Assembly (NCBI GenBank): GCA_965112155.1
Contig: OZ218108.1
Direction: 5' to 3' (one strand)
Source: Podarcis liolepis
Lineage: Eukaryota
Length of the DNA: 64,000 nucleotides
The notes beneath the pieces were generated by a model, which did no database searches, was not told the DNA's origin, and saw only the letters and a list, made by a program, of their open reading frames with translations. This document shows, in pieces, positions 1 through 52,041 of this stretch; position 1 is the first letter of the stretch, and each line of letters opens with the position of its first letter. Made by a program: the position numbers and the translations under genes.

Positions 1-460
1 CCAGCAGTCAAAATGCCATTCAGAATGCACTGAAACAGTGCAGTTTTTGCCCACAGAAAGGTTGTTTTATTTCTATTGCTACAGCACTGTAAAGAAATAA
101 AACATGCAGAAACATGAGGCCTGCTATAAAATATAAGTATTCTAACATTATGCAGTCTTTTGCTAGTTATTGTAGAAAAGCGCCAGAGGTTAATTTTATT
201 TTATTCAAAGTTCTTGGATCCAATGATACATGCCCAGTATCTGTCCAGCACATTGTTCACTTAACAAGTATTTCACCACTTTACTATGTACCAAACAAAT
301 TCTGAATACAGTACATGATTTCCTCTATTTCAGCATACAGATAAATCTACAAGTATTTTTAACAGTGAACTCTGATAAAAAAACACTTTCATGGGTAGAA
401 TTGAAAATATTTACATTATAAAAGAATAAAATTGCAAGGGTATAAGCTTTGTTATCATAC

Positions 461-535
461 CTCAAGATTTTTACTCGCTACATTCTTCACTACGGAAGGA
501 AACAATTCAGATGCATTCTTCCCTCTGGCAATCAT
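461..535 (-). CDS. AP3B1: AP-3 complex subunit beta-1, coding exon 3 ([25 protein letters not shown]); gene continues beyond the left edge
   Basis: 75-nt exon bounded by AG (536-537) and GT (459-460) on the minus strand; translation matches recalled vertebrate AP3B1 (human [25 protein letters not shown]). Confidence 0.96.
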
Positions 536-1128: not shown

Positions 1129-2433
1129 ATTTTACCATTTCCAGAATTAATGCTTTCCCCACTAACAGGTCTCAGATAATTTGGCTGAGCAGTTTAATAC
1201 GACAACATATGAAAAAAGTTCCAGGCATATTTATAAACACACACAATTTGTTGTGATGGTATATTTGGAATATCACTAGCTTTAATATATATCATGGAAA
1301 TTCACATGTATCTTGCATTATTTAACTGACCAACCATAATAGCTGCAGTGTACCATGTAAATATGTATTTAGGATCTTTTTAAAGTGTATTTTGTCTCAT
1401 TAAGCCATAATGATCAGTGTAAATCCTCCTTTGTTCATGGCTCATTAACCCAAGAGAACATAATGGGTCTTTCAAAGACCAAGATATCATTTCAGTTTAG
1501 CAGCTTTAAATAGCCTGAATGTTAAAAGCTTTGGTACTGCATATTATATAGAATGAGAGGTTAAGAGTTTGCGATCAGGAAAGTTTCTTTGCTAACCTGT
1601 TGCAGTTCACAACACAGTAAAATTCTGGTTATCGTAACCAGTGCTTTACAAATTACCCTTTTCAACAGCAATGCAACTGCTCAGCCTAGCTGTAATAGTG
1701 CGAGTGTAGAATCTGTGCTGGAGTCTGAAGCTTTAGCTCTGTCATATTATAAATCTGGGTACTATTCTCTCACTAAAACATTAAGCAATCTCTCCATTGG
1801 CTTATTTACATCATAAACTCACAGTTCATTATCTACTTTCAGGGTATGACAGGGTGGACTGATTTAAATCAATGAGATTTCAACCAGATACACACCCTTA
1901 AAAGGGAAAGATTTGAATTATTGGTTTAAATCAAGTTTTCTATTTTGAAACTTATGGTATTTCCTAAAGAAGAACAGAGTAGTTAATCAGCTTTCTGTAC
2001 CACTTAAAGCAATCACAATCCAGAACCAGATTACTATGGCCAGGAGGTCCCATGCACCTGTAAACTGGCAGAAGAAACAAAGTGCCTAGTAGCTAAGCAG
2101 ATTTACATGTCCCAATTACAGAACCAAAATGCTGTTAGTATTGTGGACTTTAAAATGTACTCCATTCCAAGGATATAGGTTGCATTTAATCTTAGTAAAT
2201 ACAAATGGAAGTTCCTCACTGTTGAGGGTGGTACATACTCATGTCATTTATTTCTGGGGCTGGTAGTTCCAAATCATGCCTTACCGTGCTCAAGTCTGTC
2301 AGAGGCAACTTTGGTTTGTGAGAAACTGGGTGTACTAGTGGGCTGCATCATACTTTGATCAGGTAGAATACTACCTACACATTTTTCCGTCTTGGTAAGC
2401 CAATTGGCAAGAGGCTTCTTTGTATCATTTTTT

Positions 2434-2435
<2 letters not shown>

Positions 2436-2468
<33 letters not shown>
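2436..2468. repeat. (AG)n microsatellite
   Basis: About 16 perfect AG units seen directly. Confidence 0.95.
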
Positions 2469-2471
<3 letters not shown>

Positions 2472-2559
2472 ATCCACAGGATCTGCAGGCCCAATTTAAA
2501 ATCCCTCCTCTTTGCCACAGGCTCATTGGGTACATTACTCTGCTGCACTGTCAATCAAA

Positions 2560-4788: not shown

Positions 4789-4984
4789 TTTCCTGAATAA
4801 ATTAATGCTAATAAGGACAAAAAATACATAGTAAAGCCAATAGCTTTTTTTTTAAAAAAAAACTAGCTTCAGACTAACTCTGAGAAACTTAAATTTGTGT
4901 GTGCGTGCACATGTGTATTCAATGCATGAAGAAATACAACTTTCAGAGCTGCCAACATTATATGCACATTAAAATCTAACATAC

Positions 4985-5060
4985 CCCAACAATCCTTTTC
5001 ATAGCATCCAGCTTAGCAGAATCTTTGCTGCTTTCCAACATTTGCTTCAAATCTTCATTT
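4985..5060 (-). CDS. AP3B1: AP3B1 coding exon 2 (K|NEDLKQMLESSKDSAKLDAMKRIVG)
   Basis: 76-nt exon, AG at 5061-5062 and GT at 4983-4984; phase 2 in and phase 0 out, fitting exons 1 and 3; near-identical to recalled human sequence. Confidence 0.96.
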
Positions 5061-6679
5061 CTATAAAAGGAAGAGAAATAATGAGTTGTCATTTGTATCA
5101 CAACCTACTAATGAGGATACCAAAAAGTGTTCCAACATGCCCCAGAACTTCAAATTTTGCAACAATGCTGCTAATTGTTTTTTAAAGAGGGAGGATGCTG
5201 GAAATTAAAATGTTGCATAAATATATCCATCAGGGTGGGGAGGGGACTGAGAAGGCATAAATAAAAATAACGTGTTCTGAAGGCTGAGGATAATCAATTT
5301 AAGTAGCAGTATGGGAGGAACATTTTGTTTGGGGTGTCAAGCTATTGGAATCATTTCATAGAAAATCTCATACTAACAATCAAACACTTTATGAATTGTA
5401 ATTGCTACTGATTTTACCAAATGTGGCAATGAAAGTCTGGCTTTAAAATACACACAAGAATATATACTGGTGGTGGAGACCTAACTCCAAGTCAGCACGT
5501 TTCAAGACATGGACTGGCTTAATTTTTACAATGTTTCCAAAGAAAATGCGAAAGAAAGAACAATGAATTGTCTCAATGTGGCAACTCTGGGTAATTTTCT
5601 TCTTCTTCATCTAGGTACACACTGGGATATCTGAAATTCATAAGAAATAGTATGTGGGAAGCCTTCTCTCTTTTTAGTAACATAAAATAAGTTGAAAATA
5701 CCCTTTAATGCGAGTCTATGTAACATTTAGACAATCATTGTTGCACTCACACATTAACAGAAAAAAGAGATACTACTGGGGAGGGAAGAAGGTGACAGGA
5801 AGAGGTTTTTTAAAACTGGCAATCCCTTCTTCACTGAGGAAACAATGCCATGTCCCTCTATGGGCATATAGTAGTACATTTATTTAGGCCGGAATCCAAA
5901 GACTTAGTTTAGGCTGAAATCTTATACACTTTCTGGCCTGAGTAGATGTGTACATAATTCTTCTCTTAGAGACAAAACACTTGCATGAGTTTGTTTAAAA
6001 ACAAAACAAAACTTCCCTCATCCCCTAATTTCCTTAACATTCTGTGAAGTGTCTCACTTTTAAATGAAGTTTACCATGTGGGACTGCTATATGAAAAGCT
6101 CAAATATATTTCCTGCAACTTGTTCAAGGTGTCAGATCTTTTAGGATTCTGGCTACTCTGTTTAGAAAGTATTCCAGGTACAGTTAGCCCACTGTAAGAT
6201 TAGATGAACAAATGCTACACACACTTAGGAGGCCAGTTTGCTATTACAGTTATGATTGAGCTGATTTCGCCTCTGCGTATCATCATCAATGAGATAAGTA
6301 CGAAAAATGCAGGAATTATCACTTCATTAAAAATTGTGGCATTTTCTATGTTATCCTTAAAAAGCATTTTAAAAAATTCTGTAAGAGATTTAGAACAACA
6401 GAACATGAATTGCTACTTCAAACAAACTCTCGCCTAAAAATAAAGGAATTAATTTAGCTTGTACTAAACAGCACTTCAGTGCTGATCTAAGCCTCTTGGC
6501 GACATGCTCAATTAAATAAGAAGGAGTTATTTTTTAGTGCACAATAACAATACATTGTTACGGCTCAGATAGTTAAAATATAACATTCACAGTATAATAT
6601 TGATTATTAGTCATTCTGCACTGTATGAAAAGTAGATCACAAAAGACAGGTGAGCAACAGCAAGTTTACCAATACTTAC

Positions 6680-6816
6680 AAAACAAGGTTTTCCTCACAT
6701 GGCTCAAAAGTACTAGTAATCCCACTCTCTTCTATACTAGGATCTGGTTTTAAGGTAACTTCTAGGGACGCTGCTTTTTCAAGAATAAATCTAATATTGC
6801 AACTAGAACTACTCAT
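6680..6816 (-). CDS. Candidate alternative first coding exon of AP3B1 (MSSSSCNIRFILEKAASLEVTLKPDPSIEESGITSTFEPCEENLV)
   Basis: aaaATGa start, 137-nt open frame, GTAAGT donor at 6679-6674 in phase 2, which joins exon 2 in frame; same length and phase as canonical exon 1. No transcript evidence available. Confidence 0.45.
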
Positions 6817-7321
6817 TTTAGCAAACGAAGAGTCTTGCTCCACTTCTTCTAACTCAGGAAAAAGAATTAAGTGCACTGGTAACCAGACCTTATCAGGATC
6901 AAGATTGCAGTGTGGTTTGAAAAAACCTATGAGGTAACAGGATACCCACTCCCTTCACTTGAAGAAAATGCCTACTGTATAAAAGGTCATTTCCTTTTAC
7001 AGAAATACATCTTACCAGCCAACTTCAACAAACAATCTTATTATATTGCCTGCTTGCTTTAGCTTAACAAGAATTATGGAACATACCAGGAATTTTATAT
7101 AGCTGTAAAAATGAAATCACATGCAACAGATCCCTCATAATGTCTATGCTGAATTCTAAAAATCAATGCAAAATTATATGATTTTGGCCTTGTTTCCGAA
7201 GCCTCTTTATAAATATTACCTTTCTGACAAAGGGCCAAACTAAACGAAAATTAGATTTCAGGTTCTCTTCATAGTTGAAGACCTAATTTACACTGGATTG
7301 GAAGCCAACATCCTTCTAGAC

Positions 7322-7574
7322 CATGGGTAGGCAAACTAAGGCCCAGGGGCAGGATGTGGGCCAATTGCCTTCTAAATCTGGCCCGCGTACAGCCCAGGAA
7401 TCAGCGTGTTTTTACATGAGTAGAATGTGTCCTTTTATTTAAAACACATCTCTGGGTTATTCGTGGGGCATAGGAATTTGTTCATTCCCCCCCCAAAAAA
7501 AATATAGTCTGGCCCCCCACAAGGTCTGAGGGACAGTGGACTTGCCCTCTGCTGAAAAAGTTTGCTGACCCCTG
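7322..7574 (+). mobile_element. ~250-bp hAT-type MITE (family A)
   Basis: Ends catgggtaggcaaac / tttgctgacccctg; perfect 8-bp TSD ttctagac (7314-7321, 7575-7582); sister copies at 14258, 30470 and 51196. Confidence 0.88.
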
Positions 7575-7591
7575 TTCTAGACCGTCTAGAG

Positions 7592-7685
7592 CAGCCTTTC
7601 TCAACCTGTGGGTCCCCAGATGTTGTTGAACTACAACTCCCATCACCCCTAGCTAGCAAGGCCAGAGCCTAGCTAGCAAGGCCAA
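7592..7685. mobile_element. Half of a palindromic hAT MITE (family B-like), ending in a local duplication
   Basis: cagcctttctcaacc..cagatgttgttgaactacaactcccatca matches one arm of family B; cctagctagcaaggcca is repeated twice at the break. Confidence 0.65.
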
Positions 7686-8149
7686 GTCAGCACAGAAACA
7701 ATTAATTTCAATGAACATTGAACTATTTTCTAAATGTTAGGCATGTCAAAAGAATGTCACAACCAGCACAGGGACTCTTCACTAACAGACCTGGAGAATC
7801 ACAGTGTTATTTACATCTTTTACACTTACTGCACTAAAAATATTTCCCCACACCCCAAATAAGGTCTGACATTTTATTTATGCAATAAAAATAGCATTCT
7901 GCCAAAGTATTGATAGCTTGCAGCAATGCTACACAGATTAAACAAAGCAAGATTCTAAACTTCTAAAATATAATTAATGCCATCCCTCACCCTTGGGATA
8001 TGCCCCAGTGTGTACATTTTCAAAACATATTCACAATGTGTATAAAATATTTCAAGCTTCAAAGCACACTTTCTGCCATCACTTTATACCACAGCTGTTT
8101 GAGTGACATCTTGTGGCATGATTCCGACATTACCATATTCAGCACTAAC

Positions 8150-8880
8150 AAATTCATTTTATTTATATATTTTATTGGCTTTTTATCCCACCTTTCTAAA
8201 ATATACAGAGGGCAACCTATAAATGTTAGAATAGTAAAACAGAGCCCTAAGAACAAAACCAGCCGCAGTAACCATTGTAAGCTGCTGCTCATCCTTAAAC
8301 ATTCTAAACATCCTTCAGAAATACAAATTTAGAGAGACATGCCTTTTTAGGGAGGCCTTCAGAATTCTTGGTGCCACAGCGGATGAGGCCCCATCTATGA
8401 TACCCACTTGCCACCTGTGATGAACCAGAGATACCTGGAGAAAGGCCTCTAAAATGCAACAGAGCTCCTGGAGAAGGAGAGTAACTCTGGTTCCACATTA
8501 TATAAGACTTTAAAAATAAAAAAACATTGCTTCAAATTGGACCTGGAAGCAAATTTTAGCAAGAGAAACAGATAAAAGTTTTTTGTGAGATAAGATGTGC
8601 CATGTAGGCAACCATATTCTGAATCAACTGAATTTTCCAAATTGGTACCAAGGGCAGCCCATTATATAAAACATATTATAGTAATTTAACCCTGAAGTGA
8701 CTAGAGATCTGGCTGTCCCAGGAAAAGATACAGCCAGTATATAAGACACAGCTGGAAAAAGGCATTCTTGGCCACTAGCACCACCTGGGCATCAATCTCA
8801 GGAACTGCTGCAGCCTTATCCAACATAGGATGCCCACTCCAAGATTACCAGAACCCCTAAGAAACAGTACTTCCAATTTG
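8150..8880 (-). mobile_element. Degraded L2-like LINE 3' portion
   Basis: (ttta)n-like tail near 8150-8180 and a decayed RT C-terminal region resembling the copies at 45640 and 60838. Confidence 0.45.
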
Positions 8881-8928
8881 TCTGGATTCAGCTTTTTAAA
8901 AGATGCTTTATTTGGACAACTACCTCTT

Positions 8929-9969
8929 CATAGATCACTGCCTTGTGGTGGCGAAGAACTTGAATAACTCAGAGAAGCTATGAGCTATGCCGTGCAGGGT
9001 CACCCAAGATGGACAGGTCATAGTGGAGAGTTTTGACCAAACGTGATCCACCTGGACCAGGAACCGGCAAGCCACTCAAGTATCCCTGCCAAGAAAACTC
9101 CATGGACAAAGTCAATAGGAAGATGAGCCCCTCAGGTCAGAAGGCGTCCAACATGCTACTGAGGAAGAGCGGAGGACAAGTACAATGAGATTCAGAGCTG
9201 ATGAAGTGGCTGGACCAAAGCCGAAAGGTCGCTCAGTTGCGGATATGCCTGGAAGCAAAAGGAAAGTCCAATGCTGTAAAGAAAAATATTGCATAGGAAC
9301 CTGGAATGTAAGAACCATGAACCTTGGTAAGCTCGATGTGGTCAAAAATGAGATGGCAAGAATAAATATTGACATCCTGGGCATCAGTGAACTAAAATGG
9401 ACGGGAATGGGCGAATTCAGTTCGGATTAGCATCATATCTACTACTGTGGGCAAGAATCCCGTAAAAAAATTGGAGTGGCTCTCATAGTCAACAAAAAAG
9501 TGGCGAAAGCAGTATTGGGATGCAATCTCAAAAACGATAGAATGATCTCAATACGAGTCCAAGGCAGACCTTTTAACATCACAGTAATCCAAGTTTATGC
9601 ACCAACTACTGGTGCTGAATAAAGTGAAACTGACCAATTCTATGAAGACTTACAACACCTTCTAGAAATGACACCAAAGAAGGATGTTCTTCTCATTATA
9701 GGGGATTGGAATGCTAAAGTAGAGAGTCAAGAGATAAAGCTGAGACTCCAATACTTTGGCCACCTCATGAGAAGAGAAGACTCCGTGGAAAAGACCCTGA
9801 TGTTGGGAAAGATTGAGGGCACAAGGAGAAGGGGACGACAGAGGACGAGATGGTTGGACAGTGTTCTCGAAGCTACGAACATGAGTTTGACCAAACTACG
9901 GGAGGCAGTGGAAGACAGGAGTGCCTGGCGTGCTCTGGTCCATGGGGTCACAAAGAGTCGGACTAAACA
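8929..9969 (+). mobile_element. RTE-BovB LINE, internally deleted (5' end and APE endonuclease fused to the extreme 3' end)
   Basis: IGTWNVRTMN, DILGISELKW and IIGDWNAKV endonuclease motifs, then immediately LRLQYFGHLMRREDS..GTRRRGRQRTRWLD and a caa tail; 13-bp TSD acaac(t/c)acctctt at 8916-8928 and 9970-9982; in-frame stops present. Confidence 0.9.
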
Positions 9970-12158: not shown

Positions 12159-12294
12159 CAGACTTTCTCAAACTCAGCCCTCCAGATGTTTTTGGCCTAC
12201 AACTCCCATGATCCCTAGCTAGCAAGACCAGTGGTCAGGGATGATGGGAATTGTAGTCTCAAAACATCTGGAGGGCCGAGTTTGAGGAAGCCTG
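12159..12294. mobile_element. ~135-bp palindromic hAT MITE (family B)
   Basis: Long imperfect inverted arms (ccctccagatgtttt..tacaa..cccat / atggga..ttgta..aaaacatctggaggg); perfect 8-bp TSD atctaatc. Confidence 0.88.
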
Positions 12295-14257
12295 ATCTAA
12301 TCCATGGACATGGAGGCACAATGTGGACAATCCCAGTTCCTCAATACATTAGGATTGCCCAGTTACAGCTTCATCTGAGACACACCTTAATACTACTCAC
12401 ACATCAGATCACAGGCATTTTCTATCATTTTATGCTATTTGCTAATATTGTGCCACAGTTTGAGACTCAGATTGGACCATGCAGATTTATTAGCTCAAAA
12501 TTCATTAAGGACTTACTTTATAGGATATTCCATCCAAACCATTCATCCTTTCTGGCTTGTGTGCCTAATGAAACTGGCATACTACTATAGTAGGAGGCAC
12601 AGTGCCATACTAACAGATGGCCCTGATGGTAAACATGCCAATGAACCAGTATATGCATCACATATAAATATCAGGGCTAGACTACTCTAAAATAAATCCA
12701 ATAATTTATTTCTATACATTTCCATTACTTTTATATAGGCTATGTATGCCCAGTGTGCACTAAACTAAAGAATTCAATATATAAATTCTGTATATCAACA
12801 GAAGTTATTCAGTCTCTTTCAGCATTAAACTTAGGAATCAGTATTGTACTGAAACACCATCTTCAGTCCATTCTCAGCAAAGGAGTCATTTGCAAAACTC
12901 AAAGGCAGTTTGCTACCCTGCTGCATTTGCTAGTACACATGTACTCTGAAAAGGAAAAAGGCTCCAATAAATTACAATCACATTTTGTTTGGCAGGAATC
13001 TAGTCTAAAGATGCAAATTCATGAAGTTGAACACTATTCTTCTAAATTTTGCCATCTGTTGAAAAGTTCACATATTCTACCTACCACTATGCACTTTTCA
13101 TATAATATGCCTCCAAATTTTAACATTTGGTTAAAGATTTCATTTTTACTGTTGCTGTTAAGATGCAGTTTCCAAAGGTAAGGAAAAGAAAGGCTTTTAT
13201 AAAATTCACACATTTAAATATGACAGAACACATTTAATTTGGAATCAGAACAGTAACTGCTGGCAAGAATAAACACTCTTGTATGAGAAACATTCCAAAA
13301 TATCTGGAAAATCAGTTCCACCTGAAATCAGCTGAACATTAAAATGTTTTATACGTCACTTCCTAAAGATATTCCAATCAAATAAACTTTACGTGAAGGA
13401 TCAGTATGAGCTACTGACATCTGGATCTTTTATAAAGCTTGTGGTTCTTGGTTTAAATGGCCAGATTACATCTTGATTAAGGGAACTTCTATCAATACTA
13501 TTCAGACATTAAAACGAATTTTCAATTCTATCAAGAGATCTGAACCATTGCTTTCTCATCATATCACTCTACCCTCAGGTGAACAAGCCTTGCTATTCAT
13601 TTCTGTGTTCCTGGCATGGTTGGTCTAGTTCTAGCAATCAAAGTATTTGTTAGAAGTACTGCATACTGAATAGTTTGATGACGTTCTTCAACTCTGGTTC
13701 AAGTTATAGAAACACCCTTACTTTTCAATGCAATCCAATTCAATCATTCCACACTTATCTTCAAGGATGTAGGGCAGCAATTGAGAGCAATTGACAATTG
13801 ATGGCCTGTGGACATATTTATAATTTTGAGTGTATACCATGACATCACCTTCTCTGGATGCTTCTCCTGTCCACCCAGACAGAAAGTGTGCACACACTAC
13901 TTTGCTTTTCCCAAGGGGTATGGGTAAAAGTCAGATTCAGCAGAATTAAAACAGTTCCTCTTGGAGTTCCCCCAAAACAGCATCACTGATAGACAGCACA
14001 GAAAACAACCACTCTACAGATTTGGTGCTTGGATGGAATCTTGGATCCAATGATTTTTGCACAGGATGGCAACTAAACCACAACAAATTACCCAACATAT
14101 ATATACATGAACACAGAGGTGACCAATAATTTGATGACATTTTTAGGGGATCCCATGTAAAAATTACGAGTATCCATAACTTGGAACTGTATTTCTGCAC
14201 CATGGAAGCTAGGATGGTTAGAGGTTACCCAGTCAGTTAGTCCTAATTGCCTTAGGC

Positions 14258-14500
14258 CATGGGTAGGCAAACTAAGGCCTGGGGCTGGATCCAGCCCAAT
14301 CACCTTCTAAATCCAGCCCATGGGCGGTCCAGGAATCAGCGTGTTTCATGTGAGTAGAAGATGTCCTTTTATTTAAAATGCATCTCTGGGTTATTTGTGA
14401 GGAATTCGTTCATCCCCCCCCCAAAAAAAATAGTCTGGCCCCCCACAAGGTCTGAGGGACAGTAGACCAGCCCCCTGCTGAAAATGTTTTCTGACCCCTG
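14258..14500 (+). mobile_element. hAT MITE family A
   Basis: Same ends and body as the 7322 copy; perfect 8-bp TSD ccttaggc (14250-14257, 14501-14508). Confidence 0.88.
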
Positions 14501-14509
14501 CCTTAGGCC

Positions 14510-15300
14510 CTCCCCTCAACAGGCAGGTGTAGAGTTGTAGCCAATCTGAGCTGGGTGATGGACCTCACCCTACAACAGCAAATCCTTCCTGTTGAGTAGG
14601 AACTCATGAGTTTGCCATGAGTTCCATGAACAAGGCTCTCCTTGGTCAGAAGGGAGCTACTATGATAATCTCCCCTAGAGCGGATCTAACTCACCTGAAA
14701 ATCTCTGGATTAGGACCATAGGAGTAAAGGCATATAAAAGCCCCACCGAGCCACGTCAGGGTATCCATGCCCATTGCTTCTTGGGCCCTGAACCAGGAGA
14801 CCACCACCTTTCCATGTTCTGGACTAGAACAACGTCCACTTCTGGAAGGCCAAAGCAATCCACTATTTTCTAGAACATCTATGGATGAAGGATCCACTCT
14901 GTCTGCAGGTGGCTGACCCAATCTGCTCAAGTGTTGGGGGCACCCGCTAAGTGCTCTGCTGATAGGGATTCTAGATACTGTTCCACCCAGGAGAGGAGGC
15001 TGGTTGCCTCTTGCATGAGAGCCTGTGACTTGCTTTCACCTTCTTTACATATATATGCCTTGGTGGCAATGCTGTTAGAAAGGATCAGCCTGTGCTTGCC
15101 CTCCACCAGCCTCTCAGAGTGGAAGAGGGCCAGTCTGAGTGCTCCAAGTTCCAACCAACTTATGAGTTATTTGGCTTCCTCCTTGGATCAGGTTTCTTGG
15201 ACATACTGATCTTCTGTGTGGGGTCCACACACCAAGAGGGTCGCATCTGTCATTATCTGCACCCATGGCTGCGCCCTGAAGGAGTGTCCCCTTTCTAAAG
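14510..15300 (-). mobile_element. DIRS-like (tyrosine-recombinase) retrotransposon remnant, RNase H and downstream region
   Basis: ORF 14927-15154 (LELGALRLAL..RLILSNSIATKAYICKEG..LSAEHLAGAPN) resembles the DIRS1-type RNase H pattern (LELxAVxLAL..SDNxxxVAYINxQG..HLPGxxN); frameshifted and decayed. Boundaries approximate. Confidence 0.65.
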
Positions 15301-18479: not shown

Positions 18480-19520
18480 CCCGAAGTTGTTAATAGGATT
18501 TGGGGTGGGAAGGCGGCTGGGAAACGAGGGGAAGAGAGACCCACGGGCGGCTGAGCGTCTGGTCTCCTCGAAGGAAGCAGCGCCTGCACTTACTTCCCTG
18601 AGGAGAGGAAGCCCAGCCCCCGGCCGCCCCAGCCGCGCCTCACTCCGCCTCCGGCCGTTCCTTACTTACTTCTTGGTGTCGCTGCTGAAGAGCCCGAAGG
18701 CCGTCGAGGCAGAGGAGGCGGCGGCGGCGGTGGGCGTCGCTTCCTGGCCCACCTCGGGCTGAGCGTCCCCGGCCTGCTCGTTGTAGCCGACATTGTTGGT
18801 CGACATGCCCGCGCGCCGTTACTACTACTACTACTAGCACCACAACTACTCCCCCCGCCTCCGGTTCCCTCGCTATCCGACTCTTCCCCGGAAGCTGAAG
18901 GAAGAGCGGCTGCCGGAGGATAGTCACGTGGTGGCCGAGAGGGGCGGGGAAGAGCGGCCAAGGGGAACGTTCTCCGGCCTGCCTCCAGGCGCCGCCGTTG
19001 CCACGGCAACGAGGCCCTTCACGCCCGAAATCCTCCGGCTCGCAGTCACGAGAAAAACCTCCTGCCCGCGACTTCCCGAAGGCGCGCCTTACACCCCCCC
19101 CACCCCACCGCAAGTCACGAGGACACGGAGAAGCCGTTGAGCAATGCCACGTCACCCGCTAAGCGGTTGGTCTCGTGCGCGTACTTGGCGCCACGTATGC
19201 GAAGCTAAGCCTTCCTTACTGCCGGGGCTGGACCACCCTCGAGGCACCTCCGGCGGCAGAATCCCATTGCTTCTCCTCACTTCTCTAGTGATGTGGGGGC
19301 TGGAAAAGTGAGGAGAAGCGGAAGCAGCAGCAGATTCTGGTGGGAGGGTCCCCCTACCATGGGAGAAGCGGCTTCTGGCGAGATTTCACCAAAACCTGGA
19401 AGTCAGCAAAGGAGGGCAAAAGGTGCCCCCGGTGGCGCTGGAGAAGTTATCTGCTACTGCCAGAGATCTGGGGAGAAGCGGCGTCGTACGGCAGTAGGCC
19501 CACCACTACCACCACTGTCC
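18480..19520 (-). promoter_or_regulatory. AP3B1 CpG-island promoter and 5' UTR
   Basis: High GC and CpG density; ETS-like ccggaag (18888-18894), E-box gtcacgtg (18923-18930), RFX X-box gttgccacggcaac (18997-19010), TGACGTGGC on the minus strand (19146-19154). Confidence 0.8.
18670..18806 (-). CDS. AP3B1: AP3B1 coding exon 1 (MSTNNVGYNEQAGDAQPEVGQEATPTAAAASSASTAFGLFSSDTK|K)
   Basis: ATG at 18806 inside a CpG island; similar to human MSSNSFPYNEQ..GQEAT..AFGLFSSDLKK; GTAAGT donor in phase 2. This frame is absent from the ORF track because it is shorter than 60 aa. Confidence 0.95.
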
Positions 19521-26154: not shown

Positions 26155-26290
26155 CAGGCATCCCCAACCTTCGACCCTCCAGGTGTTTTGGACTACAATT
26201 CCCATCATCCCTGACCACTGGTCCTGTTAGCTAGGAATCATGGGAGTTGTAGGCCAAAACATCTGGAAGGCCACAGGTTGGGGATGCCTG
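26155..26290. mobile_element. Palindromic hAT MITE family B
   Basis: TIR caggcatccccaacct / aggttggggatgcctg; 8-bp TSD atcta(c/g)gc. Confidence 0.85.
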
Positions 26291-26416
26291 ATCTAGGCTG
26301 TCAAGGTCAAAGTGTTACGTAATGTCATCTAAACTATCAAAGACGGGGGGGCAGAGAGAAACAAGAGAAAATGGGAAAAGACTAAGTGCTCTTTCACACA
26401 TGAAGCCAATGTGAAG

Positions 26417-29795: not shown

Positions 29796-30469
29796 CAGAG
29801 AGAGCACTATTCTATGACACTATTCTATGAATGTTTACTTGAAGGGAAGTCATCTGTCTCTTCCACATATTTTGCCACTTCATAGCCTTGCAATCTGCCT
29901 AATATAACCTATTATTTATTGGCCTTATCATCTGCTCAATATAAAATAGCTGAAATCTTCTCCTAGACCAGATAAACTAAATAGTTCAGTTTGCGTCATG
30001 TGGCGTACCATGAAACATTCTTACAGCTATTTTCTGCATTTTATTTTTCCTTACTAGCTTTTATTGTACTCAAATAAAAGAAGTGGAAAATGTAGTAGAG
30101 TCAGCCAGTAAAACTTATGCTTCTGTTCAAAACAAGCACATGGTTGGAAGAGTTTAATTTCACCAGCTACATTTTATAATATTTATGCAGTTCTTTGTTT
30201 GCTGCATTTCATGTGCAAAAACAAATACCTAAGTAGCTTTTACTAACAGGAAAAGAGAGCAAATGAGGATAGACATAAATGACACATTTCACCAGGTTTA
30301 ATGGGGTGAGCAATCCTAAAAACAAGGTTATTTTCTTCTGACCCTCCATTCCCAATTTGGGATGTAGATGTAATGTGGTCCACTCATATAAGGCAGCCAC
30401 ATGGGTTCCACTTCACTGGCATACCTGAGTGTTGTCACACACAATAAAGTACCTTCTTAGAACTTAGAT

Positions 30470-30725
30470 CAAAGGTAGGCAACCTAAGGCCCGTGGGCCA
30501 GATGCGGCCCAATTGCCTTCTCAATCCGGCCTGCGGGCGGTTCGGGAATCAGTGTGTTTTTACATGAGTAGAATGTGTGCTTTTATTTAAAATGCATCTT
30601 TGGGTTATTTGTGGGGCATAGGAATTCGTTCATTCCCCCCCCCCAAAAAAAAATATAGTCCGGCCCCCCACAAGGTCTGAGAGACGGTGGACTGGCCCAT
30701 GGCTGAAAAAGGTTGCTGATCCCTG
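30470..30725 (+). mobile_element. hAT MITE family A
   Basis: Same body as the 7322 copy; perfect 8-bp TSD acttagat (30462-30469, 30726-30733). Confidence 0.88.
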
Positions 30726-38851: not shown

Positions 38852-40247
38852 GTAGAGACTTGTAGGACCAGTGTAAGGCAATGATGGCTAATCCTTGGCT
38901 CTTCAGATGATGCTGGACAAAAACTCGCATTATATCTGAATATTGGGTTCAGGACTGCTACAACATTTGGATGGCTTCAGATTTGCAATCCCTGGTGTGA
39001 TGTGTGATGTGATATTGCTTGATAACTGCGGTTTACGGGATTTAATTCATTCTCAGATTGTGTAATGAGCCTAAGTTGCACGATAACTTTTAAATTCTCA
39101 TTTTCAATGAAAAGGTTTAGGCTTCCTTTATAAAAGTCAAGATAAACAACTCATGAATAGAATCATAGACTCAGAGAACTGTAGAGTTGGAAGAAACTCT
39201 GAAGGTCATTACTCCAAGTTCTCCAAGCCCTTGAATGTGCAAAACAAAGGAATTGCTAAGTATCTAGATGGGTATAATATAGTACAGTTTACTAGAGAGA
39301 GCCCCAGTTCTTCTTGTTGTGCACTGCTTACATTATCAAAAGTCTAGCTGTCAATATTAAATTAGTCAGACGAGACCTCCATCTGCAGGTTTCAAATTCA
39401 ACTACACGTGTAGTTGTATGTTTTAGCATATGTTGTAATGATGATGTTCCTGCAATTTTCACTGAGCAAACTTCTGAGGAGCACGTGCCTTTTGCCTGCA
39501 TTCCCTTTGTGGCAACTTTCTGTTATTTTTCTGCAGTATCCCTCTCCACAGAGGTGCATCCAGCATCTTGGTCATACAGCTTTCACTGTATGCTGAAGAC
39601 ACACCTTGAAAAGTTAAAATTTATTGTTTTTGGAACCCAGCTCTTTTGCTGAATTTATCATATTTGCTTCTATTTTTGTAGTTTTACTTGTTTTATGGTT
39701 TTATTTGTTTTTGTAATTGTATATTCTATTATTGTGACCTACCTTGAGAACTTACAGTGAAGGGCAAGTAAGAAATATTATAAATAAATAAATTTAGAAG
39801 TTGCTGTTCCCTCTCTGTTCCATCCTTCTGATCTTACAGCGGAAGAAGGCATAATTCACGGAAAGGAGCATACATCCAAATTGTGTTCTTTCTTCCTAGG
39901 CAAAGATAAAAAACTGGTTAAGATTGTTTTCTAATAGGTTATAAGTACGATGTAGATAGTCTATTTTCTGCCATTGAACACCAACAAAATGAAAGTTAAG
40001 ATGGACAGTGCTACCATGATCCCTACAAAATCTAAGTTTTCTTTTTCCATTGAAACTTTTTGTTTCAGCAGAAATCTTTTTACTTTTATATATAAAGTCA
40101 AAAGCTGTGTCTTTTTGATGGAATTCCAAGCTTCATTAAGTACATTGATAAAATATATGTAACTGTTGTTCAAAACACATAAACCACTTCTTTATGTAGT
40201 GTTCATTATACCTTGTCTGCACTAGGTTTTGTTAGATAAGTGTAAAC

Positions 40248-40383
40248 CAGGCTTCCTCAAACTTGGCCCTCCAGATGTTTTGAGACTACAGTTCCCATCA
40301 TCCCTGACCACTGGTCCTGCTAGCTAGGGATCATGGGAGTTGTAGGCCAAAAACATCTGGAGGGCCAAGTTTGAGGAAGCCTG
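40248..40383. mobile_element. Palindromic hAT MITE family B
   Basis: TIR caggcttcctcaaacttggccctccagatgtttt; TSD (g/a)tgtaaac. Confidence 0.88.
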
Positions 40384-40808
40384 ATGTAAACCCCTCAGTC
40401 ATCTGAACGAACGGTTCTACCAGCCAAATTTGGTCTCCATTAATTAAACCTAAAGCTGTGTTTAAAATTGATTGCAAGTAGATTTTAAATGAAGGGTTGT
40501 TTTTTTCATTGAAGCTTTCCTGCCTGCTGCATGCATCATCTTGGTTTAATGATTTGGGAAAATGCTTACTTAATGTTCAAGCTTTATATTTCATTTCTGT
40601 TTACAAGTTTTATTGAATGCTTATGTGATACCGAAGCTATAGTGTATCCTCCATGATGGTTGTTAGGGATATAATCCTGAACCAACTTACTGTGAACCTA
40701 AGTCTTATTGAATTCAACAGACACTCTAGTCAGACTTAAATAGGACTTATTTCTGAGTAGATATGGTTTAGACTGTGCTGCAAAACTCTCATTGCTAGAT
40801 ACTGTGTT

Positions 40809-48536: not shown

Positions 48537-48672
48537 CAAGCGTGGCCAAACTTGGCCCTCCAGCTGTTTTGGGACTACAACTCCTATCATCCCTAGCTAA
48601 CAGGACCAGTCGTCAGGGATGATGGGAATTGTTGTCCCAAAACAGCTGGAGGGCCAAGTTTGGCTATGCCTG
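48537..48672. mobile_element. Palindromic hAT MITE family B nested in an old minus-strand SINE (about 48440-48710)
   Basis: Inverted arms; TSD ccct(a/g)gtc; the flanks join into a CORE-SINE-like sequence ending ..ctacaccactg. Confidence 0.8.
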
Positions 48673-50756: not shown

Positions 50757-51195
50757 TATGTGCTTTTTGATCCTGTGAAGGGTCTCTGTGCTGCTGCAAC
50801 ACAAGTAATAACTGACCATCAAGGTATATAATACTGTGGCACTCTGAGAGAAATATATTTCATTTTCTCAACAGCTACTTAATGGTTAGTAGTTAGAAGT
50901 TTATATCTGTGGCCTGAGTTTAAATAGAACACTTTAGAAGCATGAGGAAGAGTGCAGTAAACGAAAAGCAGAATTTTGATCTTTTTACCATGCTAATTAA
51001 TGCAACCAAAAGATCTTGATTGTTCTTGGAATTTCTATGCTGAGCTATTTTAAGTAAATACTACAGAACAGGCTATGAAACTTAATATCTCTTGCATCTA
51101 AGTCATTGTCTTTTAGTCTGTGTTCAGTATTAAACTTGCATGTTCCGTGCCTGAAACATTTTGCTGTACTTGATATTGTACTTCATTGTTTAAAG

Positions 51196-51429
51196 CAGGG
51201 GTCAGCAAACTTTTTCAGCTGGGAGCCGGTCCGCTGTCCCTCAGACCTTGGGGGGGGGGGCGGACTATATTTTGAAAAAGGAAAAAAATGAACGAATTCC
51301 TATGCCCCACAAATAACCCAGAGATGCATTTTAAATAAAAGCACATATTCTACTCATGTAAAAACACGCTGATTCCCGGACCGTCCGCGGGCCAGATTTA
51401 GAAGGCGATTGGGCCGGATCCGGCCCCTG
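51196..51429 (-). mobile_element. hAT MITE family A lacking the outer 22 bp of one end
   Basis: Reverse orientation; perfect 8-bp TSD gtttaaag (51188-51195, 51430-51437). Confidence 0.88.
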
Positions 51430-52041
51430 GTTTAAAGGAATAGATTCAGACAGAAGAAGATAATAGTGAACTGTTCAGCTTACTGATGTCTTGTCTCTTG
51501 TTTGTTCATGACATACTGCAGCGAACCAGGAGTAGGACTTGTAATGATGGCTTCAATTTTGAATGTGTTAGAAACCAAAACAAAGGTGCCTCTCCGTTGG
51601 AAGAAAACCTCTTCCACTCATGGAAGGGCTGTTCCAACCAATTTAGCATTTAGGGTCACTTTTCTCATGCAGTGCTCTTTGGCTGTGAATATATAAAATT
51701 TGTAAACTACTTAACACAGTATATTGAAATGGAGTACAGTTCCTGTTTGTTTCAGGCTATTTATTTAACTTGTTTATTTTATTAAGATAGCTTGCTTGCC
51801 CTTCAGTATAAAGTCCCACAGTGAGCTACAACAATAAAATATACAATTATAAAATAAATCAAACAGTAATAATAACAAAGAAAAGTGTAAAGAAAGACAA
51901 AAGTTTCAAATAAAACAATTCCACATGTAAACATATTTGTAATGCAAATATAGACAAAGATTAACATTTCATGTGGCAGCAGTAGTACATTTTCTGCATT
52001 TGCTTGCAGGTCATCAAATGCAAGCAACTTGATGCCCTGAA

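What the first reader, a model, noticed from the sequence alone, without database searches (positions are those of the whole stretch)
6680..6816. Hidden alternative first coding exon of AP3B1 with the same length and phase as exon 1
Seen: on the AP3B1 sense strand, an ATG with A at -3 (6816) opens 45 codons plus 2 nt, followed by a consensus GTAAGT. That is exactly 137 nt and phase 2, as in canonical exon 1 (18670-18806), so it would splice in frame to exon 2 (..EENLVL-NEDLKQ..). The peptide starts MSSSS (human AP3B1 starts MSSNS) and shares M1, S2, A15, S31 and F37 with exon 1 without gaps, which is weak similarity. A TATAAAA lies upstream (7099-7093). A possible 89-nt 5' UTR intron (7015-6927) would remove two upstream ATGs. 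Inference: a second, non-CpG, possibly tissue-specific promoter giving an AP-3 beta3A subunit with a different N-terminus, perhaps from an old exon duplication.
Basis: partly seen in the sequence, partly recalled or inferred. Interest (0 to 1): 0.78.

Follow-up and report, generated by a model that had tools for sequence, protein, structure and literature searches.

The report
Possible lizard-specific alternative AP3B1 first exon
A short open reading frame inside the first intron of the trafficking gene AP3B1 could splice in frame to exon 2 and looks protein-conserved in a few related assemblies, but no RNA reads used it.

Summary
On the minus strand, ATG 6816 opens 45 codons plus 2 nt and ends at TTT|GTAAGT (6680/6679). 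It has the same length (137 nt) and phase as AP3B1 exon 1.

This alone is near chance. 24% of shuffled introns give such an ORF of at least 100 nt; 13% give one of at least 137 nt.

The exon-duplication idea fails.

RNA gave no support. Three bulk RNA-seq runs and one RNA contig set have zero depth on the exon. All 20 listed junction reads and the mRNA contig join exon 2 to canonical exon 1.

A protein search found six unspliced ORF homologues in Logan assemblies of unknown species. All six end at the same Leu-stop. All indels are in frame. Their replacements are more conservative than neutral drift allows (0 of 1000 simulations). The five distant ones start at a Met nine codons upstream, where this genome has GTG.

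Best reading, about 45%: a real, lineage-restricted alternative first coding exon whose start codon has moved here, with expression unshown. Chance ORF: about 30%.

The parts
6680..6816 (-).
   Evidence: RNA depth was zero in 4 of 4 runs. The frame is homologous to six Logan ORFs.
6817..6843 (-). In-frame upstream extension. GTG at 6843-6841 sits where 5 of 5 distant homologues have their Met (MEQ, MEK or MDQ).
6674..6679 (-). GTAAGT donor candidate with a weak exon side (TTT). Its TAA is also the stop of the unspliced ORF.
   Evidence: All six homologous ORFs end at this same column.
4985..5060 (-). AP3B1 exon 2 (residues 44-68 of AP-3 beta-1)
   Evidence: Covered in all 4 runs. Loose ends at both edges lead to exon 1 and exon 3.
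18670..18806 (-). Coding part of canonical AP3B1 exon 1 (residues 1-43), in a CpG-rich promoter region
   Evidence: The loose-end consensus at 5060 equals 18670-18699.
458..535 (-). AP3B1 exon 3 (residues 69-94)
   Evidence: The loose-end consensus at 4985 equals 506-535.
7093..7099 (-). TATAAAA proposed as a promoter element; no support found
   Evidence: It is one of 7 TATAAAA on this strand of the intron. X1 contig piece 6939-7122 runs across it.
6927..7015 (-). Proposed 89-nt 5' UTR intron holding upstream ATGs at 7010 and 6990; untested
   Evidence: No joint was seen. X1 contig piece 6939-7122 is collinear with the genome across its 5' part.
6955..6990 (-). Short upstream ORF in the same frame (ATG 6990 to TGA 6957-6955). 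In P0001 the TGA reads Trp, which gives one 104-codon ORF.

Best explanation
The frame at 6843-6680 (minus strand) is most likely a genuine protein-coding first exon of an alternative AP3B1 transcript, confined to a group of lizards. A promoter inside intron 1 would give an mRNA whose first coding exon splices from the GTAAGT at 6679 to exon 2 at 5060. This would replace the 43-residue N-terminal extension of the AP-3 beta3A subunit with an unrelated acidic peptide of about 46-57 residues, and the adaptin trunk (from exon 2 on) would be unchanged.

In relatives translation would start at a Met that this genome has lost (GTG 6843-6841).

Shown: the anatomy in this genome, the homologous open frames elsewhere, and the conservative pattern of their replacements.

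Inferred: that those ORFs are orthologous and lie in AP3B1 intron 1, that the shared stop reflects a conserved donor, that the exon is transcribed and spliced at all, and where its promoter lies.
For: 1. Compatibility. It has the same strand and phase as exon 2 and a perfect intron-side donor hexamer.

2. Homologues. phmmer against 1.84 billion representatives gave 5 hits at E <= 0.001. Four are true homologues and one is a spurious 870-aa repeat protein. Two profile searches gave 6 of 155 and 6 of 346 candidates, the same six ORFs each time.

3. Shared end and indels. All 6 of 6 end at the same Leu followed by a stop, as GTAAGT or GTGAGT after ..TTG would give. The three gap sites (1, 3 and 1 residues) are all in frame.

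4. Start codon. 5 of 5 distant homologues keep a Met at one column. In two of them (P0005, P0007) the called ORF starts further upstream, so that Met was not forced by gene calling.

5. Conservative replacements.
- 35 replacement events on 40 gap-free columns have a mean BLOSUM62 score of +0.35.
- Neutral drift from this DNA gives -0.47 to -0.53 (sd 0.21-0.24), and 0 of 1000 simulations reached the observed value in each of 4 settings.
- Conditioned on detectability, 0 of 400, 0 of 400 and 0 of 396 reached it.
- With kappa 8 and 15 the counts were 0 and 1 of 600. Eighteen other intronic ORFs used as ancestors gave means of -0.84 to -0.33.

6. A boundary at the Met. In the same frame, identity upstream of the Met is 9 of 34 pair positions, against about 56% in the body (Fisher P = 0.018 for P0001-P0005). 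The upstream mismatches score -0.52 (n = 25), which matches the neutral value.

7. Strand specificity. The longer antisense ORF (95 codons) has no homologue at all.

8. This species. It differs from the majority at 12 columns, and those changes are conservative (mean +0.58), so there is no sign of decay.

9. Structural tolerance. Exon 1 encodes only residues 1-42/43, ahead of the trunk. Swapping it should therefore be tolerated; this is an inference.
Against: 1. No RNA support. Depth over 6732-6899 is 0 in X16, X17, X18 (raw bulk RNA-seq, about 12-13% of each read) and X1 (contigs).
- The listed loose ends at 5060 are 3 + 7 + 10 reads plus the 2518-nt X1 mRNA contig. All carry the exon 1 end, with agreement 1.
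- No joints were reported.

2. No spliced fragment. Nothing of 36-182 aa carrying this peptide joined to AP3B1 sequence is in the protein collection.

3. Weak conservation. Pairwise identity is only 47-70% between lineages.
- Neutral drift of 0.13-0.16 substitutions per site per lineage gives the same identity and leaves the frame open in 55-61% of lineages.
- It keeps the stop in 75-80% and the first codon in 63-69% of lineages.
- Invariant columns (14 of 52) are not in excess.

4. Ascertainment. Only intact ORFs can be seen in a protein collection, so broken orthologues are invisible.

5. Unknown context. Orthology and donor conservation are therefore unproven.

6. Weak local signals. The exon side of the donor is poor (TTT). 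There is no CpG island (observed/expected 0.21).

7. Chance anatomy. The anatomy in this genome alone arises by chance in 13-24% of shuffled introns.
Confidence: 0.45

Rival explanations
1. A chance open frame in ordinary intron DNA. An AT-rich intron throws up many ORFs and GTAAGT hexamers. One of them happens to be in phase with exon 2, and related species still share the alignable sequence. Only those in which the frame stayed open were called as ORFs and are visible in the protein collection.
For: - Shuffled introns give such a candidate in 13-24% of cases.
- 32 of 266 ATGs in the intron open 45 or more codons.
- The identity level, frame survival, stop survival and number of invariant columns all fit neutral drift.
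- No RNA evidence was found.
Against: - Replacements are far more conservative than neutral mutation gives: 0 of 1000 simulations in each of 4 settings, and the result holds when conditioned on detection and with a strong transition bias.
- Conservation drops upstream of the shared Met.
- Three of three gap sites are in frame.
- The antisense ORF has no homologue.
Confidence: 0.3
2. A real alternative first exon in related lizards that is no longer used in this species. The ancestral ATG has become GTG, and the downstream ATG is an accident rather than a working replacement.
For: - GTG sits at 6843-6841 where 5 of 5 distant homologues have Met.
- RNA depth is zero in 4 of 4 runs.
- This lineage differs from the majority at the most columns, 12.
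Against: - The frame, the donor hexamer and the phase are all intact here.
- The 12 differences are conservative, with mean BLOSUM62 +0.58.
- The near-identical P0001 also keeps the frame.
- This lineage may simply be the outgroup.
Confidence: 0.12
3. A stand-alone small ORF of about 46-57 codons, or an exon of another unannotated transcript nested in the intron. It would be translated to its own TAA stop and not spliced to AP3B1.
For: - All seven sequences, this window's included, end with Leu then a stop.
- Only unspliced forms are found in the collection.
- There are signs of selection on the protein.
Against: - A stop that is also a perfect GTAAGT in phase with the next AP3B1 exon is not expected for a plain stop codon. 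This is an inference from the sequence.
- No transcript covers it in 4 of 4 runs.
- No Pfam family matches, 0 of 7 members.
Confidence: 0.07
4. An old duplicate of exon 1, the origin the reader proposed.
For: The two exons have equal length (137 nt) and phase, and both start Met-Ser.
Against: - Ungapped identity is 5 of 45, against a shuffle mean of 4.04 (P = 0.36). The BLOSUM62 sum is -14 (P = 0.24).
- The best blastn matches between the two regions are 8-16 nt at E = 3.5.
- hhalign of the seven-sequence profile against exon 1 gives probability 0.06-0.1%.
- Homologues have 56-57 codons from their Met, so the equal length holds only in this species.
- Any length of 3n+2 would be in phase.
Confidence: 0.02

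Closest known systems
Canonical AP3B1 exon 1 (N-terminal extension of AP-3 beta3A, residues 1-43)
   Same: Same gene and strand, the same 137-nt coding length and phase 2 in this genome, and the same splice target, exon 2.
   Different: - There is no sequence relation.
- GC is 0.36 against 0.68, and CpG observed/expected is 0.21 against 0.91.
- The canonical exon is used in every junction read seen; the candidate is used in none.
- The canonical exon matches the human chain (E = 1.6e-4). The candidate profile matches no AP-3 chain; its best PDB E-value is 0.29, to an unrelated protein.
Conserved alternative first coding exons reported by earlier follow-ups of this scan in the same genome (KCNIP2, DLG1, DOCK10, dystonin; notes seen, not checked by me)
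   Same: A short ATG-initiated frame inside a 5' intron, ending at a donor in phase with the next common exon.
   Different: According to those notes, the other exons occur in public gene models from fish to birds or mammals. This one has only six anonymous, unspliced Logan ORFs and no named gene model among the lengths I could search.
Chance intronic ORF or pseudo-exon
   Same: AT-rich intron context, a weak exon-side donor, no reads, and an anatomy that shuffles reproduce in 13-24% of cases.
   Different: Homologous frames elsewhere carry conservative replacements, only in-frame indels and a shared end.
Poison cassette exon
   Same: A pyrimidine tract and an AG at 6854-6853 precede the frame. 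This could define a 173-nt internal exon, 6852-6680, that uses the same donor (read).
   Different: After exon 1 it would read AAT TAG and stop at once, so a conserved open frame and a conserved Met would have no role. No reads support it either.

Membership tests
Alternative first coding exon of AP3B1 | Lies on the sense strand between exon 1 and exon 2 of AP3B1 | tested here: met
   Exons 1, 2 and 3 match residues 1-42, 44-68 and 69-94 of AP-3 beta-1 chains. The candidate lies at 6816-6680, between 18670 and 5060, on the same strand.
Alternative first coding exon of AP3B1 | ATG-initiated open frame running to a 5' splice site in phase with exon 2 | tested here: met
   45 codons plus 2 nt, then GTAAGT. 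The joined frame reads through into exon 2. The exon side of the donor is weak, TTT (the scoring matrix was recalled and approximate).
Alternative first coding exon of AP3B1 | Spliced to exon 2 in RNA | tested here: inconclusive
   - No junction read and no depth on the exon in 4 of 4 runs.
- 20 listed junction reads and one mRNA contig all use exon 1.
Alternative first coding exon of AP3B1 | Own transcription start or promoter | not testable with these tools
   No CAGE or 5' end data. TATAAAA at 7099-7093 is one of 7 in the intron. The X1 contig piece runs across it.
Alternative first coding exon of AP3B1 | Start codon, frame and donor kept in related species | tested here: inconclusive
   - The frame is kept in 6 of 6 homologous ORFs, and the end column is the same in 6 of 6.
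- A different Met is kept in 5 of 5 distant ones and lost here.
Alternative first coding exon of AP3B1 | Selection on the encoded protein | tested here: met
   The replacement pattern is more conservative than neutral simulations. This uses proteins only, with no dN/dS. It is model-dependent and rests on five lineages.
Duplicate (paralogue) of AP3B1 exon 1 | Sequence similarity to exon 1 beyond chance | tested here: not met
   5 of 45 identities (P = 0.36), no nucleotide match, and hhalign probability 0.06-0.1%.
Interspersed repeat or transposon-derived ORF | Further copies in the window or many copies in databases | tested here: not met
   Self-BLAST of 5100-9000 against the window gives no second copy of 6600-7300. 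The nearest repeats are at 7317-7665. Only six homologues were found among 5.8 billion protein clusters. No Pfam family matches.

The most novel reading that the evidence does not exclude
A group of lizards has evolved a second AP3B1 promoter and first exon. The result is an AP-3 beta3A subunit whose disordered N-terminal extension, including the FGLFSSD stretch shared with human, is replaced by an unrelated acidic peptide kept under selection. In this species the start codon has been lost and re-created nine codons downstream. That turnover would itself argue that translation of the exon matters.
Probability: 0.4. Interest if true: 0.55.

Novelty: new member of a known kind. Interest (0 to 1): 0.45.

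Why it matters
AP3B1 encodes the beta3A subunit of the AP-3 adaptor, which sorts cargo to lysosome-related organelles. From general knowledge, loss of the gene causes Hermansky-Pudlak syndrome type 2 in people and the pearl phenotype in mice.

Three literature searches found no paper on an alternative promoter or an N-terminal isoform of AP3B1 (I saw listings only, plus one passage).

If the exon is real, it would be a lineage-restricted isoform that changes only the unstructured N-terminal extension. That would give a natural handle on what the extension does. It would also be a case of start-codon turnover within an exon.

If it is not real, it shows how an in-phase ORF with a consensus donor can arise by chance. 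It would also show that anonymous ORF collections can mimic conservation.

Tried and rejected
**Exon duplication: rejected.** Tested with a shuffle test, blastn and a profile comparison.

**Repeat or transposon origin: rejected.** There is no second copy in the window and no Pfam family.

**Openness of the frame as evidence: set aside.** I first took the cross-species open frames as strong evidence. Simulation then showed that substitutions alone leave the frame open in 55-61% of lineages at the observed identity. Stop and start survival, and the number of invariant columns, are also unremarkable. I therefore do not rest the case on openness.

**Antisense control: blank.** The 95-codon ORF on the plus strand found no homologue; 2 candidates shared words and none scored.

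**Exact look-up of nearby ORFs: 0 of 8 in the collection.** This says little. Five of the eight start with GTG or TTG and may fail for that reason alone.

**Other blanks.**
- The metagenome scan for relatives matched 243 pattern stretches, and none was confirmed.
- The PDB profile search found nothing significant; the best E-value was 0.29.
- The findings look-ups gave no note on AP3B1 and no species name.

**Literature.** Three searches found nothing relevant. In one search AP3B1 appears only in a gene list from cattle.

**Not done.**
- I made no search with a joined, spliced model, so full-length AP3B1 gene models carrying this N-terminus could not be sought. Such isoforms would also be hidden inside clusters at 50% or 90% identity.
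- No supplements were needed or opened.

Full report
**1. What is in the sequence**

- On the minus strand, ATG 6816-6814 has A at -3. It opens 45 codons plus TT and ends at 6680, followed by GTAAGT at 6679-6674.
- The coding part of canonical exon 1 (18806-18670) is also 137 nt and phase 2.
- Exon 2 is 5060-4985 and exon 3 is 535-458.
- The gene is AP3B1. Exons 1, 2 and 3, searched one by one, match residues 1-42, 44-68 and 69-94 of AP-3 beta-1 chains in the PDB.
- Read without splicing, the frame stops at once (TTG TAA). The same letters are therefore also a plain 46-codon ORF.
- The frame is open upstream to a GTG at 6876, 66 codons in all.
- The TATAAAA (7099-7093), the GT...AG pair bounding 7015-6927, and the two upstream ATGs (7010, 6990) are all present.

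**2. Is this anatomy more than chance?** Not by itself.
- In 300 dinucleotide shuffles of intron 1 per setting, at least one ATG-ORF ending at GTRAGT in phase 2 arose in 49% (>=60 nt), 23.7% (>=100 nt) and 13.3% (>=137 nt). With a purine at -3 the last figure falls to 5%.
- The real window gives the same order of magnitude on both strands: 0.14-0.28 such sites per 13.6 kb per phase at >=100 nt.
- The sense strand of the intron has 266 ATGs, of which 32 open 45 or more codons. It has 10 GTAAGT, among them the canonical donor and this one.
- It has 7 TATAAAA.
- The equal length of 137 nt carries no extra weight, because any length of 3n+2 is in phase. The homologues described below have a different length from their own start.
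- A longer ORF (95 codons) lies on the opposite strand over the same letters.
- There is no CpG island: observed/expected is 0.21, against 0.91 at exon 1.

**3. Exon duplication**

This idea fails.
- The five shared residues (5 of 45) equal what shuffling gives (mean 4.04, P = 0.36). The ungapped BLOSUM62 sum is -14 (P = 0.24).
- blastn between the two regions finds only 8-16 nt matches at E = 3.5.
- A profile of seven homologues against exon 1 gives hhalign probability 0.06-0.1%.

**4. RNA evidence**

One run search listed 23 runs of the species label. I laid 4800-7300, which holds both the candidate and exon 2. The runs were three raw-read bulk RNA-seq runs (X16, X17, X18; about 12-13% of each was read) and one contig set (X1).
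- Exon 2 is covered in all four runs. Mean depth is 4.7, 7.6 and 15.7 in the raw-read runs. In X1 it lies in a 2518-nt contig of depth 116.
- The loose ends listed at 5060 number 3, 7 and 10 reads plus the X1 contig. All have one consensus, with agreement 1. That consensus is exactly 18670-18699, the 3' end of canonical exon 1.
- The loose ends at 4985 lead to 506-535, which is exon 3.
- Depth over 6732-6899 is 0 in all four runs, and no joint was reported.
- Apart from exon 2, the stretch carries only a pair of sense intronic reads in X18 (about 6480-6650) and two low-depth X1 pieces (6231-6381 and 6939-7122).
- The second X1 piece runs across the TATA box and into the proposed UTR intron without a break. 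It looks like pre-mRNA and does not suggest a transcript starting there.

Limits of this test:
- The tissues are unknown.
- With 20 junction reads, an isoform making up roughly a tenth of transcripts or less would be missed in the raw-read runs.
- Contigs show presence, not absence.

**5. Homologous frames elsewhere**

phmmer with the 46-residue ORF against 1.84 billion representatives gave 5 proteins at E <= 0.001.
- One is a spurious 870-residue repeat protein.
- The other four are short ORFs: P0001 (104 aa, 98% identical), P0002, P0003 and P0005.

Two profile searches, with length windows of about 36-115 and 57-182 residues, added P0006 and P0007 and nothing else (6 of 155 and 6 of 346 candidates).
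- All six are unspliced, and no fragment continues into AP3B1 sequence.

The alignment shows three things.
- All six end at the same Leu followed by a stop.
- The five distant ones have a Met (MEQ, MEK or MDQ) at one column. This genome and P0001 have Val there (GTG 6843-6841).

The frame and the end are kept, and a different start is conserved.

Pairwise identity from that Met to the end is 47-70% between five lineages: this window with P0001, P0002, P0003 with P0006, P0005, and P0007.

**6. Is that conservation or drift?**

No dN/dS is possible, and orthology is an inference.

Simulated neutral drift from this window's DNA shows that several features are weak evidence.
- At 0.13-0.16 substitutions per site per lineage, pairwise identity is 0.53-0.59, close to the observed 0.589.
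- The frame stays open in 55-61% of lineages, the stop stays a stop in 75-80%, and the first codon is unchanged in 63-69%.
- Invariant columns (14 of 52) match the expectation of 9-15.
- A protein collection can only show intact ORFs.

Three observations do not fit drift.

First, the replacements are conservative.
- Over all pairs of the five lineages, mismatches average +0.07 in BLOSUM62, against -0.51 to -0.60 in simulations (P <= 0.003). An AT-biased model gives the same result (P <= 0.002).
- Counted as 35 events on the 40 columns away from gaps, the mean is +0.35, against -0.47 to -0.53 (sd 0.21-0.24). 0 of 1000 simulations reached it in each of four settings.
- When simulated sequences must be as detectable as the real ones, 0 of 400, 400 and 396 reached it.
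- For pairs that do not involve the query, the figure is -0.01 against about -0.46. It was reached in 2, 0 and 4 of 150 sets.
- A transition bias of 8 or 15 changes nothing (0 and 1 of 600). Eighteen other ORFs of the same intron, used as ancestors, give -0.84 to -0.33.

Second, there is a boundary at the shared Met.
- Three ORFs run on upstream of the Met. In the same frame there, identity is 9 of 34 pair positions, against about 56% in the body (Fisher P = 0.018 for P0001-P0005; the two smaller comparisons are not significant).
- Those upstream mismatches average -0.52 (n = 25), which is the neutral value.

Third, all three gap sites (1, 3 and 1 residues) are in frame.

In addition, the antisense ORF has no homologue. 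This species' 12 departures from the majority are themselves conservative (+0.58).

Caveats on these tests:
- There are only five lineages, and their tree is unknown.
- The simulations use a star tree with this window as the ancestor.
- Only proteins were compared.
- The three gap sites would also be filtered by ascertainment.

**7. Reading**

Two independent lines point the same way. In this genome the frame has splice compatibility with exon 2. Elsewhere the same frame shows protein-like conservation.
- A chance ORF explains the first line easily and the second poorly.
- A real coding exon explains both, but it has to assume tissue-restricted or low expression to fit the RNA result.

I put a real, lineage-restricted alternative first coding exon of AP3B1 at about 0.45. 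In this version the start has moved from the lost Met (GTG 6843) to ATG 6816. The other readings are:
- the same exon, but disused in this species: 0.12
- a chance ORF: 0.30
- a stand-alone small ORF or an exon of another transcript: 0.07
- an origin from exon 1: 0.02

Mechanism, as inferred: a promoter in intron 1, the first exon spliced at 6680/6679 to 5060, and a beta3A subunit whose 43-residue extension is exchanged while the trunk stays the same. The promoter, the TATA box and the 89-nt UTR intron remain speculation. An AG at 6854-6853 behind a pyrimidine tract offers another way into the exon.

**8. Comparison with the known, and novelty**

Alternative first coding exons are a common, known kind. 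If real, this would be a new member, narrow in distribution and absent from the named gene models I was able to reach.

Earlier follow-ups of this scan on the same genome reported such exons in other genes, backed by gene models across vertebrates (not checked by me). This case lacks that backing.

Three literature searches found no paper on an AP3B1 alternative first exon or promoter.
- Searches gave 1, 5 and 4 papers. I saw only the listings.
- In one passage of PMC12237680, AP3B1 is just a name in a gene list.

Full-length isoform models with this N-terminus may therefore exist unseen.

**9. Verdict**
- Expression is unshown.
- Interest is moderate (0.45).

Noticed in passing
window 14695-14774 (minus strand): A second ATG-initiated frame in AP3B1 intron 1 is also in phase 2 with exon 2. 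ATGs at 14774 and 14768 give 80 or 74 nt, ending at a full-consensus donor CAG|GTGAGT. It is shorter than the candidate but has a much better donor.
   Followed up: no
window 7317-7582, 14253-14500, 30465-30725, 51188-51430: An interspersed repeat of about 260 nt has four copies in the window at 83-85% identity, one of them inverted. The nearest copy lies about 220 nt upstream of the proposed TATA box.
   Followed up: no
window 7577-7665, with matches at 12159-12299, 26218-26305, 40240-40391, 48560-48609: A second, shorter repeat family (50-89 nt matches at 76-82% identity) occurs in both orientations. At 12159-12299 and 40240-40391 it forms inverted pairs.
   Followed up: no
In the near-identical P0001 that codon reads Trp, which fuses both into one 104-codon ORF.
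   Followed up: partly
window 6852-6870 (minus strand): A pyrimidine tract and an AG (6854-6853) lie 10 nt before the GTG that replaces the relatives' Met. With the same donor this would define a 173-nt internal exon. After exon 1 that exon would read AAT TAG and stop. No read supports it.
   Followed up: partly
window 18823-18840 (minus strand): A run of AGT repeats sits in the 5' untranslated region of AP3B1, just upstream of the canonical ATG.
   Followed up: no
window 6269: One X1 contig (151 nt, depth 2) reads A where the window has G, and differs at 4 letters in all. This is probably an allele or an error.
   Followed up: no
window about 2430-2500 (minus strand): A dinucleotide microsatellite translates as runs of Ser-Leu in two frames.
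   Followed up: no
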